Part shown: in pieces, positions 52,548-60,105 of the stretch
Position numbering within the stretch: position 1 is the first letter of the stretch
Layout: each line of letters starts with the position of its first letter
Assembly: GCA_002104905.1 (NCBI GenBank)
Contig: MCFE01000194.1
Coordinates: 62,001-126,000, forward strand
Length of the DNA stretch: 64,000 nt
Direction: 5' to 3'
Source of the DNA: Basidiobolus meristosporus CBS 931.73
Taxonomy: Eukaryota; Fungi; Basidiobolomycota
The notes under the pieces: generated by a model
What the model was told of the DNA's origin: nothing
Seen by the model: the letters and a program-made list of their open reading frames with translations, nothing else
Databases searched by the model: none
Made by a program: the position numbers and the translations under genes

Positions 52548-53822
52548 CTACTGGTCGCCGTTTCGGAGGAATCTAGGGTAGGAGTGCTGGTACATCACGG
52601 TCATGATCTCCACCTGGGCCTTCTCGTAGATCTTGGTGAAGTAAGGGGGGCCCCTTTCCAACTCCACCTTGACCTCCCTTAGGGTGGCCCCGGTGATGTT
52701 GAGCTCGTAGCGGGCGCCGGATTGGAAGAACAGCCGGTACATCCGCTCGATCTCCTGGGTGACCGGATCGGGCTCCCCGGTCTCGAGGACGCTGCCGGAC
52801 TCCTCGTGGGAGTAGGCGATCTCGGAGAGACGCTGGTAGTGCTCGTAGAACAGGATGTTCTCCACGCTGAAATCCTTCACCGCGAAGCTCTTGAACCTCG
52901 CGAACATCTCCGGGCTCTCGAGCACCTGCAGGAAGGAGCTCTTGTTCAGCCCGAGCGTGCGACCCGCGTTCAGGTACGAGTTGACGATCGGGATGACCAC
53001 GGTGTTGAAGTGGACGAGCACCAGCGCCGCCAGGGTCCAGATGGTCTCCGGGAAGAAGAGCTGGAGGTTCTGAAGGTCCGGCATGAACAAGGCCAGCGTG
53101 CGCACGATGAACGAGATCCCCTCGATGAACATCACCACCGTGAGCTCCCTCTTGATCCAGTAGGAGTCCTCGATGCCCCACACGAGGAACGCCAACGCCG
53201 GGAGCATGATGAACACGTAGAACGCGTGGAAGCCCACCCGGGGGATCAGCTCCCAGGTGAATCCGCACCCGATGGACCCGGCGGTGGTGGCCTGTCCGGA
53301 GCCGATCTGGATGAAGAGGGTGAGCGCGACGTGGAACACCACCAGATACCCGATGTATCTCAGCAGCGTGCTGCACGACATCATCTCCCGGTTCCTCAGG
53401 TACCAGTCCTCGGTGATGCCCAGGCCTCGGAAGAAGGGCATCTTGAGGGGTCCCTTGGCCTCCTTGGTGGTCTCGAGCTCGTTGAACATGGAGTTCATCG
53501 CGCACATCAGCCGAACCTGGTTGTACCGGTAGAGAAAGGCAAGCCGCAGGAAACGCGCCCCCATGACCAGGAACCAGAGGGGGATCCCGACCGAGGTGAC
53601 CCAGAGGACCAGGAAGCAAGGGTAGATGCCGGGATCCACCTCCCGCAGGATGTACCCGCTGGTGAGGACCCCGTTCGTCGCCACGCTCAGGCACAGCAAG
53701 CTCAACCCGCGATGCTTGATGGCGGGGCTGGCGCGCTGGTGGATCAGGATGACGATGGAGGTGAGTAGGAAGAGTATCCACACGATTAAGAAGATGACCA
53801 ACCCGAGCTGGATTCCGTCCAT
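52548..53822 (-). CDS. 7TM-RGS protein (seven predicted TM helices plus C-terminal RGS domain), 424 aa, intronless
   Basis: Seven hydrophobic segments with a PAIKHR..YPC..LW..ARFLRL pattern resembling class-C-type 7TM domains; RGS core FKSFAVKDFSVENILFY...YELNI...IYEKAQ.EI...MYQHSYPRFL; strong GC3 bias. Start placed at Met 53822 because the upstream ATG (53876) overlaps a TATAAA; AATAAA on the minus strand at 52345-52340. Confidence 0.92.
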   Translation of the reverse strand: MDGIQLGLVIFLIVWILFLLTSIVILIHQRASPAIKHRGLSLLCLSVATNGVLTSGYILREVDPGIYPCFLVLWVTSVGIPLWFLVMGARFLRLAFLYRYNQVRLMCAMNSMFNELETTKEAKGPLKMPFFRGLGITEDWYLRNREMMSCSTLLRYIGYLVVFHVALTLFIQIGSGQATTAGSIGCGFTWELIPRVGFHAFYVFIMLPALAFLVWGIEDSYWIKRELTVVMFIEGISFIVRTLALFMPDLQNLQLFFPETIWTLAALVLVHFNTVVIPIVNSYLNAGRTLGLNKSSFLQVLESPEMFARFKSFAVKDFSVENILFYEHYQRLSEIAYSHEESGSVLETGEPDPVTQEIERMYRLFFQSGARYELNITGATLREVKVELERGPPYFTKIYEKAQVEIMTVMYQHSYPRFLRNGDQ

Positions 53823-53874
53823 GCTGATTGAGTGGGAGACTGGGCTAAATGAGGTTTCCTCGTCGCACGCGGCC

Positions 53875-53881
53875 ATTTATA
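53875..53881 (-). promoter_or_regulatory. Putative TATA box of the 7TM-RGS gene
   Basis: TATAAAT on the minus strand, about 55 nt upstream of Met 53822. Confidence 0.55.
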
Positions 53882-54253: not shown

Positions 54254-54979
54254 TCAGGACCTGAGGTAGGCCATGATGGCGGCTGGGATCGCGGCCAGCA
54301 TGACTGAGGCCGAGAGTTGGTTGGACCCGCTGGGGGCCTTGATCGGGGTAGCGCTCTTGGTAGGGGCGGAGTTAACGGCGCTCGAGGGGATACTGGAAGC
54401 AGACGCTTTACTGGTGGCTGCGCTGGTGGAGGCCGAGCTGGAGGGGCTGGATTTAGTGGACTGGGAGGAGGAAGAGGGGGTGGATGAGGTGCTCGCGGTG
54501 GAAGTCCCACTGGAGCTGGCGGGGGTTTGAGTGGAGTTGCCGCTGGGGACCGGAGAGGCCGATGCCCCGCCGCCCCCAGCAACGTTAAAGAAGTGGCTGT
54601 ACTTTACGTCGGGTCCGTTGCCTGCCCGGACGACGTAGTTCTGGCCGTTCTCCATGTTCGCCGGAACGGTCCATTCATATTTCCCATCGGCGCTGGAGAC
54701 CCCGGATGCGATGACCGTCTTGACCTGAAGCGCCTCGGGAGGGCCAGACATCAGGGCGATGTCAATCTTGGCGGGGGTGGCGGGCGGGGAGTCGTTCACC
54801 AACCTAAATACCATCAGTGACTGCGGCGCGATGGGGATGTTTCTGACGGCTACTTACCAGGTGATGGTGATCTTGTTACCGCTCTTCCACACAGTGCCAT
54901 CCACGGGCTGGGTGATGGAGTAGTCGGCCACCACGGATGCGGCTAACACGAAGATGCTGGCGAGGGACTTGGTGAACAT
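54254..54979 (-). CDS. Kre9/Knh1-like N-terminal domain, Ser/Thr-rich, GPI-anchored cell-surface protein (223 aa)
   Basis: Exons 54979-54858 and 54803-54254; 54-bp intron GTAAGT...CTGAT...TAG. Signal peptide MFTKSLASIFVLAASVVA; ITQPVDGTVWKSGNKITITW...YEWTVP...YSHFF domain; S/T stalk; hydrophobic C-terminus; TATATAA at ~55084-55078. Confidence 0.92.
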
Positions 54980-57178: not shown

Positions 57179-58749
57179 TCACTCCTCCATGGGCTCCGCC
57201 GAGAGCTGCTCGTAAGGAGCGGGGCGGATGGAGAAGGCGGTGGCCTGGCCGCTGAGGTCCCGCTGGGCGGGGTTCCCGCCGGTGGCGCCGTTGCTCACCC
57301 CGAACACCTTCAGCTTCTCGGCCCAATTCTCCGCACGGTCGACGCTGTCCTTGAAGATCCCCGCGATGCTGTTGAGCATCAGGAGACTCTCGGTGGCAAA
57401 GACCAGCACCCGCTGCGCGGATCCAGGGAGGTTGTTGCGCGGGCCATCGGAGGCGGGGGACATCAATGGGGAGCCCATCGGCGAAGGCGATGCGCTGTGT
57501 ACTGTGGCCTGAATAAAGTCCCTCGGTTAATGAACTGCATCCTGTTGGGTTAGATCACTCGCATGGAGCCTTACCAAACGTCCGGGCAGCGTCAGGATAA
57601 ACTCCCTGACATGCTTTCGGGCCTCTCCCGGTAGACACGATCCCGCGTATCTTCCCACCACATCCACCACCTTGCGCACCGTCTCGATCAGCTCGCGCTT
57701 GATGCTCGCCAGCGTGCTGGGGTTGTGCACGGTCAGCGCGGTGGATTCCGAGGAGTTCCCGTTAAGGCCGGCGATGTATTCCTTGAGCAACGAGATTTGC
57801 TGATCGATGTTCCCGGTGGCATATTGCAGCCACTGCAGACAGTACTTCAGCGCCCTCATACTCTCCTCGCTGAACGCGGCCGCTCCCGCCCCCGCCGCCG
57901 CGGACGCCTCCACAAGGTATTGCTCCCACCGGCTCCGCTGGACGCTGGCAGTGCTCACCTGGGTTAGGCTTTGTGATTGGCTGGGTGGGTCCGATGTGAT
58001 GTCTGGTTCCAAGAGGTTACTCTTCTCGCCCACAACAATAGTTTACCCATGGCCGGTGGCTTACCTGTTTCCTTCGCCGAAGAGACGTTCCTCTGGCGCA
58101 AACCAGAGGTTTCGTGTGCCATCACCTCCTCCCCATCTTGCCTCTTCAGGGAGGGGTATCTCTTCTCCAGGGAATCCAGTTGTCGACAGGCAAACTCGTC
58201 CAGCTGGCCGAGCTGTGGCTCGAGTTTGTTCAGCACTGGCATCCCTATGGTTTTCACCGCGGACTCTACTCTTTCCGCCCCATACTGTCCAGGAGAAAGG
58301 AGCGAAGGTCAGTTTGACAGCTAGTAACAGGCGTCTGGTTAACCCCCCCCCTCCACATACCTTGACGATTTTGCTGTTTGTCTTGCTCTGTTCGTAGAAA
58401 CGAAGGGCCGAGTTGACCAAGGGGATGTTGGACACTCGGGAGATGAAGGGTTGATTCAAGGTCTCCAGCTCCCCATCTACGTTGAAAAAACCGGTGAGAA
58501 TCCTAGGTCGCGGAGCAGACTCCTCGAAGTCGACTTACCTTGGGCACCATCGCCCAACGCCCTCATGGTGCCTAAGGCCTGCACGGCCTCCATCTCTTGC
58601 GACATGCGCTCAATGTCGGAGTCTTTCATATTGGAGACATCGCATAGCTGCTCGATAGACATAGGGGAGGGCAAGTCGTATTCAGGCCCGGTCTGGGCAA
58701 GCGAGTGGATCTCGCTGATTGGGGGTAGCGTCTGAGTATCGTTAGACAT
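57179..58749 (-). CDS. OPI1: Opi1-family transcriptional repressor with N-terminal perilipin PAT-like domain (~434 aa, 5 exons)
   Basis: Exons 58749-58539, 58476-58361, 58284-58065, 58002-57575 and 57508-57179 (1305 nt); introns 62, 76, 62 and 66 bp, all GT-AG. Opi1 blocks RSRWEQYLV, SEESMRALKYCLQWLQYA, IKRELIETVRKVVDVVGRYAGSCLPGEARKHVREFILTLP and AQRVLVFATESLLML. Confidence 0.92.
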
Positions 58750-58962: not shown

Positions 58963-59009
58963 GGTCAGTAGCTGGTCAGTAGCTGGTCAGTAGCTGGTCA
59001 GTAGCTGGT
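58963..59009. repeat. Perfect 11-bp tandem repeat (GGTCAGTAGCT)x4.3 in the OPI1 upstream region
   Basis: Four exact copies plus GGT, about 20 bp upstream of a TATATA on the OPI1 strand. Confidence 0.97.
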
Positions 59010-59075: not shown

Positions 59076-59535
59076 CTTCACATGATTCCCTCCCTCGCAT
59101 GACCAATAGTGGCTGGTCCAATGTGCGGATATTCCTATTGCCAGCGTAGTGCGGAAAGTCGTGGGAGCCCTTTTTTTCGACTTTCACGTGAATATCGCCC
59201 GCCCATCAGCCAATCATCAATTGACTCTTGGGCATTTCCTGTTGCTTCTTGCCGTTGATTACTATCACATGGAAGCCACCTTAATCCTCGTGTTCTCGAT
59301 TCCTAGGTGCCAAAACCATGGCGTTTTATTGCCCGCGTTTCGACCAAATGGGAGAAATATCCATTGGCTGGAGTGGATCTAGCACCAGGACACAACGTTT
59401 GTCGCAGATATGGGAATTCAGGGTTTAGAGTTTGTTACAGTGACAAGCCCACTGGTTTGTATTCGGTGATTCAATATGGATTGGGATTTGGTGCGGATTT
59501 GGTGAGATTCGGTGCGACCATTCCTTTTTCACATG
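59076..59535. promoter_or_regulatory. Three UAS-INO/ICRE-like bHLH sites and three CCAAT boxes in the divergent promoter
   Basis: CTTCACATG 59076-59084, CTTTCACGTG 59181-59190 and TTTTCACATG 59526-59535; CCAAT at ~59103, ~59117 and ~59210. Function is inferred from motif match only. Confidence 0.5.
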
Positions 59536-60105
59536 AATCCTTCCTTCTACCTGCTCTCGCTGTGGTGGTGGGCGCTACTGTGCTACTGCCAGCTGATAGT
59601 CCCTTCCTTTTCCCCACCGTTGCCTAGCAATCATTGCCAGCTGGGCTTGGAATTGGCCGTGGAAACGCTCCTGGACTCTGACTGCCTCCCGTTACGAAAG
59701 CTCAACCCCGTGTTTACCCGCTTGGCAAAAGACCCTGAGAGTGTGAACGCCACAGTGGTCTCTGCCTTTGATCTGGTTTGCCGCTTGCCTTCTTGCTCTG
59801 CTGACTCCTTGAGACGCTTCAAGGATACCATATACACCCGATGCCATTCCGATCTCGCGAATCCATTGATCGCCTCCTATCTTTGGGTTGCGGAGAACTT
59901 TCAGCCGCTGACGGAATGGGGCTGTGCCAACGGAGAGGGATGCTTGGTCAGGCTCCTTCTCACCTGGCTACTGAACGAGCGAAGTGTGCTACTCAACGAC
60001 TCCAATCCCAAGCTTTGCAAGAGATGTCGATCCACTTGGCTCGATATGGAGAAACGGTATCCGACTTTGAAAGCCACCTTTGTCAGCGAACTTCTGCAAT
60101 GCTGA
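59533..60105 (+). CDS. Secreted cysteine-rich helical protein (190 aa), intronless
   Basis: Signal peptide MNPSFYLLSLWWWALLCYC; 10 Cys in the mature part; no C-terminal hydrophobic anchor; CpG retained. Confidence 0.82.
   Translation: MNPSFYLLSLWWWALLCYCQLIVPSFSPPLPSNHCQLGLELAVETLLDSDCLPLRKLNPVFTRLAKDPESVNATVVSAFDLVCRLPSCSADSLRRFKDTIYTRCHSDLANPLIASYLWVAENFQPLTEWGCANGEGCLVRLLLTWLLNERSVLLNDSNPKLCKRCRSTWLDMEKRYPTLKATFVSELLQC

What the first reader, a model, noticed from the sequence alone, without database searches (positions are those of the whole stretch)
58050..58476. Opi1 homologue carrying a perilipin PAT domain and no FFAT motif: a possible lipid-droplet-sensing repressor
Seen: exons 2-3 encode QPFISRVSNIPLVNSALRFYEQSKTNSKIVKYGAERVESAVKTIGMPVLNKLEPQLGQLDEFACRQLDSLEKRYPSL, fused to unmistakable Opi1 C-terminal blocks, with no EFFDAxE anywhere in the protein. 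Known (PLIN2 recalled from memory): the animal PAT domain reads QPSVVTRVVNLPLVSS...Y.STK...LKSVCEMAENGVKT...ALPIIQKLEPQIA...YACKGLDRIEERLPIL. Every block aligns in order (RVxNxPLVxS, ExxExxVKT, KLEPQ, ACxxLDxxExRxPxL) with two gaps of about 7 residues. Yeast Opi1 is held at the ER via FFAT-Scs2 and phosphatidic acid and can partition to lipid droplets. Inference: Opi1 may descend from, or be fused with, a perilipin, and here may be sequestered on lipid droplets rather than on VAP, coupling neutral-lipid storage to phospholipid gene repression. I cannot tell whether this homology is already described.
Basis: partly seen in the sequence, partly recalled or inferred. Interest (0 to 1): 0.85.

Follow-up and report, generated by a model that had tools for sequence, protein, structure and literature searches.

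The report
Opi1 family carries a perilipin PAT domain
This Basidiobolus gene is an ordinary member of the fungal Opi1 lipid-regulator family. Its conserved N-terminal block is truly homologous to the PAT domain of animal lipid-droplet perilipins, and nearly the whole family outside budding yeasts shares this link, which I could not find described in the literature.

Summary
A five-exon minus-strand gene (57179-58749) encodes a 434-aa protein identical to the annotated Basidiobolus meristosporus "Opi1-domain-containing protein". Residues 78-182 match Pfam Perilipin (PF03036, profile positions 5-118) at E 1.2e-13, 51.4 bits against a cut-off of 33.

- Exon 3 alone retrieved true perilipins from 1.84 billion proteins.
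- BLASTP against octopus perilipin-3 gives 38% identity over 84 residues (E 4e-19).
- Profile-profile probability is 99.8%.

The segment is not special to this gene. It is the start of the Pfam Opi1 model itself. Of 129 Opi1 homologues (aphelid, chytrids, Zoopagomycota, Mucoromycota, Basidiomycota), 119 hit Perilipin. None of 161 homologues has an FFAT motif.

Only the PAT domain is clearly shared. Homology between the C-terminal four-helix bundles is a weak lead (hhalign E 1.2e-4; structure searches non-specific).

Function is inferred. The PLIN3 diacylglycerol motif LEPQL and all three kink prolines are present, which suggests binding to lipid surfaces. In yeast the corresponding, degenerate region binds Sin3/Cyc8.

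Literature searches found no description of the homology, and a 2023 paper calls the yeast Opi1 N-terminus highly divergent.

The parts
58539..58749 (-). Exon 1 (residues 1-70, plus the first base of codon 71). Includes the ATG at 58749 and a predicted N-terminal helix at residues 43-68.
   Evidence: Frame and GTAAGT donor at 58538. The spliced product equals P0107. AF2 helix 43-68 has pLDDT about 81-87.
58361..58476 (-). Exon 2 (residues 71-109): first part of the PAT-like domain (FISRVSNIPLVNSALRFYEQSK...).
   Evidence: Pfam Opi1 profile positions 1-29, E 1.7e-5. Acceptor AG at 58477 and donor GTATGT at 58360.
58065..58284 (-). Exon 3 (residues 110-182): second part of the PAT-like domain plus the start of the linker.
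   Evidence: On its own it hits Pfam Perilipin at E 3.6e-9 (36.6 bits, cut-off 33) and Opi1 profile positions 30-84 at E 1.6e-8. It also retrieves true perilipins in a 1.84-billion-protein search.
58147..58456 (-). PAT-like domain as a whole (residues 78-155; the span includes intron 2).
   Evidence: Pfam Perilipin profile positions 5-118, E 1.2e-13. BLASTP to octopus perilipin-3: 38% identity over 84 aa, E 4e-19. hhalign probability 99.8%. Atlas structure TM 0.68-0.70 to perilipin clusters over residues 78-158.
58210..58224 (-). LEPQL motif (residues 130-134). [quoted passage not shown]
   Evidence: Sequence read directly. The motif and the mutagenesis are in PMC10694602. E is kept in only 36 of 129 Opi1 homologues.
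57575..58002 (-). Exon 4 (residues 183-325): disordered linker, short pre-zipper helix, leucine zipper and the two UCR helices.
   Evidence: Pfam Opi1 profile positions 183-320, E 1.4e-44. AF2 helices 207-218, 228-264, 277-305 and 308-329.
57179..57508 (-). Exon 5 (residues 326-434 plus stop): the AID-like helix (348-394) and a disordered tail.
   Evidence: Pfam Opi1 profile positions 385-420, E 4.2e-10. AF2 helix 348-394 has pLDDT above 90.
57302..57931 (-). Opi1 core: pre-zipper helix plus the four-helix bundle (residues 207-394; the span includes intron 4).
   Evidence: The C-domain model has pTM 0.66. Foldseek finds only N. crassa CCG-8 and S. cerevisiae OPI1 as significant matches.

Best explanation
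Shown:
- The locus is one of at least three Opi1-family genes of Basidiobolus meristosporus.
- This PAT-plus-core architecture is the common and probably ancestral state of the family. It occurs from aphelids and chytrids to Basidiomycota. Saccharomyces keeps only a degenerate remnant.

Inferred:
- The PAT domain is an amphipathic, proline-kinked helical module. As in PLIN3, it probably adsorbs to diacylglycerol-rich ER or lipid-droplet surfaces.
- In this FFAT-less protein it would then provide, or add to, the membrane or droplet anchoring that keeps the regulator away from its nuclear targets until lipid status changes.
- Budding yeasts achieve the same job with FFAT-VAP binding plus a phosphatidic-acid-binding helix.
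For: Gene model and identity.

PAT homology:
- Pfam Perilipin E 1.2e-13, 51.4 bits against a cut-off of 33.
- Exon 3 alone finds perilipins among 1.84e9 proteins.
- BLASTP E 4e-19 to octopus perilipin-3.
- hhalign 99.8%.
- Reciprocal hits of perilipins to the Opi1 model.
- Mammalian PLIN2/3/5 rank 2-14 in Foldseek Swiss-Prot.
- Atlas TM 0.68-0.70.

Family-wide distribution: 119 of 129 homologues hit Perilipin. R84, P89, Y98, E116, P125, D138, C142, Q144, L145 and D146 are nearly invariant. Taxa are listed.

Lipid-binding inference:
- All three kink prolines and LEPQL are present.
- The PAT helices have a hydrophobic moment of 0.46-0.48.
- PLIN3 PAT binds diacylglycerol membranes (PMC10694602).
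- The Opi1-domain protein LdrA sits on cytoplasmic and nuclear droplets in A. oryzae.
- 0 of 161 homologues have an FFAT motif.
Against: - No localisation or lipid-binding data exist for this protein or for any Opi1 PAT-like domain.
- In LdrA, droplet binding was lost by deleting a C-terminal amphipathic helix. The N-terminal domain was not examined.
- The glutamate equivalent to PLIN3 E86 is kept in only 36 of 129 Opi1 homologues, so diacylglycerol recognition as in PLIN3 cannot be general.
- High hydrophobic moment is not specific: the bundle helices score higher.
- In S. cerevisiae the N-terminal region that holds the remnant is a Sin3/Cyc8-binding domain.
- No RNA-seq run was listed to confirm splicing.
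Confidence: 0.5

Rival explanations
1. The PAT-like domain is a protein-protein docking domain for corepressors (Sin3 PAH1/2, Cyc8 TPR), as in the yeast OSID. It has no lipid-binding role in Opi1 proteins, and its perilipin ancestry is only historical.
For: Yeast Opi1 residues 1-106 (or 45-106) bind Sin3 and Cyc8, and missense variants there affect both (PMC10163088 and PMC10709064). The yeast stretch NILDRVSNKIISNVVTFYDEINTNKR aligns with the first PAT block. The very high conservation of polar residues (R84, E116, D138, Q144, D146) would fit a protein interface.
Against: The yeast match to the Opi1 N-terminal profile is weak (3.5 bits, single-comparison E 0.004). Yeast lacks the second half of the domain, so the equivalence is tentative. 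It is unknown whether non-Saccharomycotina Opi1 proteins bind Sin3. The two roles are not mutually exclusive.
Confidence: 0.3
2. The protein is mainly a lipid-droplet biogenesis or coat factor like Aspergillus oryzae LdrA, not a transcriptional repressor. The PAT domain and the C-terminal amphipathic helix both contact the droplet surface.
For: LdrA (Opi1 domain PF08618) decorates cytoplasmic and nuclear droplets. Its loss gives many tiny droplets and its overexpression gives supersized ones. Ino2-like partners are confined to part of Saccharomycotina according to that preprint. The PAT domain is otherwise a hallmark of droplet coat proteins.
Against: Nothing here tests localisation. The conserved LZ-UCR-AID bundle is the repressor machinery in yeast. 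I could not show that LdrA itself has the PAT-like domain, because no Pezizomycotina sequence was fetched. The preprint did not test transcriptional activity.
Confidence: 0.15
3. The resemblance is convergence or chance between amphipathic helices, or a lineage-specific exon-shuffling fusion peculiar to this Basidiobolus gene.
For: Helical, amphipathic sequences can give spurious profile hits. The same exon 3 query also produced two NB-ARC/TPR proteins with multiple stretches.
Against: Identity is 38% over 84 residues, with invariant P, Y, E, P, C, L, D and L columns shared across kingdoms. Pfam hits are reciprocal and above the cut-off. 119 of 129 family members from five fungal lineages share the match, which rules out a private fusion.
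Confidence: 0.03

Closest known systems
Saccharomyces cerevisiae Opi1 (P21957)
   Same: Same family: PF08618 at 262 bits, the LZ-UCR-AID four-helix bundle, and a Foldseek hit for both the whole model and the core. A short N-terminal stretch inside the Sin3/Cyc8-binding OSID lines up with the first PAT block.
   Different: Yeast has FFAT and FFAT-like motifs, a basic PA-binding helix and a poly-Q tract. Its PAT-like domain is degenerate, and the LEPQ / ACRQLD half is missing. The Basidiobolus protein has a complete PAT domain and no FFAT.
Animal perilipins PLIN2/3/5 (PF03036), for example Octopus bimaculoides perilipin-3
   Same: Homologous N-terminal PAT domain with the three kink prolines, the LEPQL motif and the ACxxLDxLE block. 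Predicted structures superpose over residues 78-158.
   Different: There is no match beyond Perilipin profile position 118 and no helical 11-mer-repeat region (residues 152-206 are predicted disordered). The C-terminal bundle is not specifically perilipin-like. It is therefore not a perilipin in the strict sense.
Aspergillus oryzae LdrA and Neurospora crassa CCG-8 (Opi1-domain proteins of Pezizomycotina)
   Same: Same family. CCG-8 is the best Foldseek hit. LdrA shows that an Opi1-domain protein can reside on droplets and control their size.
   Different: LdrA's droplet binding was mapped to a C-terminal amphipathic helix. Its N-terminus was not analysed, and no perilipin relationship was noted. 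I could not fetch these sequences to test whether they carry the PAT-like domain.
Fungal Perilipin_2 proteins (PF17316; Cap20-type) and plant REF/SRPP droplet proteins (PF05755)
   Same: The PAT-like segment also gives weak REF hits (23.5-25.9 bits against a cut-off of 25; 37 of 129 homologues). Atlas neighbours include Perilipin_2 and REF clusters. This suggests one old superfamily of droplet-surface domains.
   Different: These matches are weaker than the match to PF03036. Those proteins lack the Opi1 core.

Membership tests
Opi1 family (Pfam PF08618) | Profile match above the curated cut-off | tested here: met
   262.3 bits against a cut-off of 29.7, E 1.3e-77. Exons 2 to 5 hit profile positions 1-29, 30-84, 183-320 and 385-420 in order.
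Opi1 family (Pfam PF08618) | C-terminal LZ-UCR-AID array folding as an antiparallel four-helix bundle (definition in PMC10709064) | tested here: met
   AF2 helices 228-264, 277-305, 308-329 and 348-394 have pLDDT mostly above 85. Foldseek finds CCG-8 and ScOPI1.
Opi1 family (Pfam PF08618) | FFAT motif for VAP (Scs2) binding, a feature of S. cerevisiae Opi1 | tested here: not met
   No strict or relaxed FFAT in the protein, and none in 161 non-Saccharomycotina-type homologues. It therefore does not define the wider family.
Opi1 family (Pfam PF08618) | Basic phosphatidic-acid-binding amphipathic helix upstream of the zipper | tested here: inconclusive
   A short conserved helix (207-218, RSRW motif) sits at the right place but has only two basic residues.
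Opi1 family (Pfam PF08618) | Transcriptional repression through activator and corepressor binding | not testable with these tools
   Known only for yeasts.
Perilipin family (Pfam PF03036) | N-terminal PAT domain | tested here: met
   51.4 bits against a cut-off of 33, E 1.2e-13, profile positions 5-118. BLASTP E 4e-19. hhalign 99.8%.
Perilipin family (Pfam PF03036) | Central 11-mer-repeat amphipathic helices | tested here: not met
   The Pfam match stops at profile position 118. Residues 152-206 have no predicted helix and pLDDT about 40.
Perilipin family (Pfam PF03036) | C-terminal four-helix bundle homologous to TIP47/PLIN3 | tested here: inconclusive
   hhalign of the C-terminal parts gives E 1.2e-4, probability 55.6%, score 37.4, against a block-shuffle maximum of 27.6. 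The C-domain model finds no perilipin in Foldseek Swiss-Prot. 1SZI scores Z 9.5 at rank 25, within the generic helical-bundle range.
Perilipin family (Pfam PF03036) | Localisation on lipid droplets | not testable with these tools
   The only precedent is indirect: A. oryzae LdrA.

The most novel reading that the evidence does not exclude
The whole Opi1 family is a perilipin that was turned into a lipid-sensing gene regulator at the base of Fungi. It keeps the perilipin order of PAT domain, linker and four-helix bundle. Its PAT domain still reads the diacylglycerol or neutral-lipid state of ER and droplet surfaces to gate nuclear activity. Budding yeasts later replaced this sensor with FFAT-VAP binding and turned the remnant into a Sin3-docking site.
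Probability: 0.2. Interest if true: 0.85.

Novelty: new variant of a known kind. Interest (0 to 1): 0.6.

Why it matters
Opi1 is the textbook example of a transcription regulator that senses a membrane lipid directly. Its family has been defined by three C-terminal domains, and the yeast N-terminus has been regarded as highly divergent (PMC10709064).

This work shows that the best-conserved N-terminal block of most Opi1 proteins is a perilipin PAT domain. In PLIN3 that domain binds diacylglycerol-rich membranes. Three things follow:

- It gives a concrete, testable reason why Opi1-domain proteins such as LdrA sit on lipid droplets.
- It suggests that sensing of storage lipid and of phospholipid precursor may be combined in one protein.
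- It links a fungal regulator to the droplet coat proteins of animals, and more weakly to those of plants.

The gene itself is an ordinary, already annotated family member. Public domain tables already list both Pfam hits on such proteins, so the advance is recognition rather than discovery of a new sequence.

Tried and rejected
- **RNA evidence for splicing.** No run was listed. Support for the gene model rests on canonical splice sites, collinear profile hits and identity to the public annotation.
- **Whole-model Foldseek against PDB.** Only generic four-helix bundles appeared, all at E > 0.03.
- **C-domain-only searches.** Foldseek Swiss-Prot found only CCG-8 and ScOPI1, and no perilipin. 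In VIA-align wide, TIP47 (1SZI) reached Z 9.5 at rank 25, within the noise for helical bundles. Homology of the bundles is therefore not established, despite hhalign E 1.2e-4.
- **Yeast OSID fragment against the Opi1 and perilipin N-terminal HMMs.** Scores were 3.5 bits (E 0.004) and no match. The OSID/PAT equivalence is only tentative.
- **Widening the perilipin set.** This yielded only 12 proteins, mostly from molluscs. No PAT-domain phylogeny was attempted, and Perilipin_2 and REF sequences were not fetched.
- **Private fusion in this gene.** Rejected.
- **FFAT loss specific to this gene.** Rejected.
- **Literature.** Searches combining Opi1 with perilipin, PAT domain, PF03036, PF08618 or ccg-8 found no paper stating the homology.
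- **Not determined.** I could not check whether Pfam or InterPro place PF08618 and PF03036 in one clan.

Full report
**1. What is at the locus**

The finding lies in a minus-strand gene of five exons: 58749-58539, 58476-58361, 58284-58065, 58002-57575 and 57508-57179. All introns have GT..AG borders and are 62, 76, 62 and 66 nt long.

The spliced product is 434 aa. It is identical at all 434 positions to a public protein named [quoted passage not shown] (P0107). So the window comes from that fungus, and my gene model equals the deposited one.

No RNA-seq run was listed for the stretch. The junctions are supported in other ways. The Pfam Opi1 profile is hit collinearly by exons 2, 3, 4 and 5, at positions 1-29, 30-84, 183-320 and 385-420. 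Homologues and perilipins also align straight across the exon 2/3 junction.

**2. Is the perilipin resemblance real?**

Yes. The evidence is as follows.

- Exon 3 alone (73 aa) scores 36.6 bits, E 3.6e-9, on Pfam Perilipin PF03036, above the curated cut-off of 33.
- The full protein scores 51.4 bits, E 1.2e-13. Residues 78-182 match profile positions 5-118 of 403, which is the PAT domain.
- A phmmer search of exon 3 against 1.84 billion representative proteins returned 106 hits. Most are Opi1-family proteins. Four are bona fide perilipins at library-wide E 1.7e-4 to 6.4e-4: a 448-aa mollusc-type perilipin, PLIN2 of Amia calva, and two fragments.
- BLASTP of residues 60-200 against perilipin-3 of Octopus bimaculoides gives 38% identity over 84 residues, 68.9 bits, E 4e-19.
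- A profile of 129 Opi1 N-terminal segments against 8 perilipin PAT domains gives hhalign probability 99.8%, E 7e-29. Both sets were picked by similarity to this query, which flatters that number.
- The relation is reciprocal. True perilipins hit positions 1-83 of the Opi1 Pfam model. The public precomputed tables list PF08618 on octopus perilipin-3.
- Foldseek of the AF2 model against Swiss-Prot ranks mammalian PLIN2/3/5 at places 2-14, some ahead of S. cerevisiae OPI1 at rank 7.
- An independent atlas search of residues 71-165 finds perilipin clusters first by sequence features, and with TM 0.68-0.70 by structure.
- The alignment shows invariant P, Y, E, P, C, L, D and L columns shared by fungal Opi1 proteins and by vertebrate and mollusc perilipins. 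It has two short gaps of 4 and 3-7 residues.

**3. It is a family feature, not a special fusion**

The segment is the beginning of the Pfam Opi1 model itself.

Of 129 homologues that have both the segment and the Opi1 core, 119 hit Perilipin at E <= 0.001 (best 4e-24), and 37 also hit the plant droplet family REF.

R84, P89, Y98, E116, P125, D138, C142, Q144, L145 and D146 are invariant or nearly so. This makes the segment as conserved as the core.

Carriers include:
- an aphelid (Amoeboaphelidium);
- chytrids (Batrachochytrium, Rhizophlyctis, Cladochytrium and others);
- Zoopagomycota;
- Mucoromycota;
- Basidiomycota.

Basidiobolus itself has at least three paralogues.

None of 161 homologues with the Opi1 core has a strict or relaxed FFAT motif.

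**4. How far does the homology reach?**

Only the PAT domain is secure.

- The Pfam Perilipin match ends at profile position 118.
- Residues 152-206 are predicted to be disordered. There is no 11-mer-repeat region.
- The core is a confident four-helix bundle.
- Profile comparison of this core with the C-terminal part of mollusc perilipins gives a collinear alignment: E 1.2e-4, probability 55.6%, score 37.4. Controls gave 19.5 +/- 3.0 (maximum 27.6) for block-shuffled alignments and 19.1 for the reversed one.
- A model of the core alone finds only CCG-8 and OPI1 in Swiss-Prot, and no perilipin.
- PDB Foldseek hits are generic bundles.
- TIP47 (1SZI) reaches Z 9.5 at rank 25 of 48,161 chains, within the range the tool itself calls uninformative for helical bundles.

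Full-length descent from a perilipin therefore remains a lead, at about 20%.

**5. What it probably does**

Established knowledge:
- The PLIN3 PAT domain is predicted to be a triangular amphipathic helix with three kink prolines.
- It binds diacylglycerol-containing liposomes and artificial droplets.
- Binding depends on E86 in the motif (L/I)EPQ(L/I) (PMC10694602).

The Basidiobolus protein has all three prolines (P89, P125, P132) and the exact motif LEPQL with E131. Its PAT helices have hydrophobic moments of 0.46-0.48, though the bundle helices score higher.

A. oryzae LdrA is an Opi1-domain protein. It localises to cytoplasmic and nuclear droplets and controls their size. However, its binding was mapped to a C-terminal amphipathic helix and the N-terminus was not examined.

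My best reading, as an inference, is that the PAT domain is a lipid-surface anchor. It would help keep this FFAT-less regulator on DAG-rich ER or droplet surfaces.

Two points count against generality and certainty. The E86-equivalent glutamate is present in only 36 of 129 homologues. No experiment addresses this domain.

The main rival comes from yeast. Opi1 residues 1-106 (or 45-106) form the Sin3/Cyc8-binding OSID. The stretch NILDRVSNKIISNVVTFYDEINTNKR inside it lines up with the first PAT block, though only weakly (3.5 bits, E 0.004 for the single comparison). The two roles could coexist.

**6. Known or new?**

The protein is annotated. Public domain tables already show both Pfam hits on many such proteins.

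I found no paper that states the homology. A 2023 study defines the family by LZ, UCR and AID and calls the yeast N-terminus highly divergent. The LdrA preprint does not mention the homology.

I could not check Pfam clan membership.

I therefore rate the gene as an ordinary family member that exposes an apparently unremarked, family-wide domain relationship: a new variant of a known kind, with moderate-to-high interest.

**7. Surroundings**

Neighbouring genes are unrelated: an RGS-domain protein and a Kre9/KNH-like protein. An exact 11-bp x 4.3 tandem repeat lies upstream of the start codon. The scan's earlier notes hold nothing on this topic.

Noticed in passing
window 58963-59009: Perfect tandem repeat GGTCAGTAGCT x 4.3, about 215-260 bp upstream of the Opi1-like start codon, in the intergenic or promoter region. 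A second, imperfect 11-bp repeat lies at 59484-59516.
   Followed up: no
P0107 residues 84-181 (window 58065-58440, minus strand): The PAT-like segment also gives near-threshold hits to the plant droplet family REF/SRPP (PF05755; 23.5-25.9 bits against a cut-off of 25; 37 of 129 Opi1 homologues). Atlas neighbours include fungal Perilipin_2 (Cap20-type) clusters. This hints at one superfamily of droplet-surface domains across animals, fungi and plants.
   Followed up: partly
P0107 residues 43-68 (window 58545-58623, minus strand): A confidently predicted helix precedes the PAT domain. It carries a family-conserved motif (consensus ...ALGDMR; EAVQALGTMRALG here). By eye it resembles EVEAAEVLGVLKQ near the N-terminus of yeast Opi1 as printed in PMC10163088. 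If so, the yeast N-terminus may be less divergent than stated. Not tested statistically.
   Followed up: no
protein P0090 (not in the window): A 159-aa record named as a partial hypothetical protein of Salmonella enterica is a clear perilipin (PF03036, E 1e-50). It is probably host or sample contamination in a bacterial assembly.
   Followed up: no
proteins P0034 and P0045 (not in the window): Two NB-ARC/TPR_10 proteins were picked up by the exon 3 query through 6-7 repeated short stretches. They look like spurious helical-repeat matches, not PAT domains.
   Followed up: partly
window 59512-60105 (+): A 197-aa ORF with a hydrophobic N-terminus and many cysteines has no Pfam family. It is possibly a small secreted protein.
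   Followed up: partly
window 52551-53876 (-) and 54257-54814 (-): Neighbouring ORFs carry an RGS domain (E 8e-14) and a Kre9/KNH-like N-terminal domain (E 4e-11). They are unrelated to the finding.
   Followed up: partly
proteins P0003 and P0025, and B. ranarum P0001, P0108, P0109 (not in the window): Basidiobolus carries at least three Opi1-family paralogues. One of them (P0025, 412 aa) has the N-terminal segment but gives no Pfam Perilipin hit at E <= 1.
   Followed up: partly
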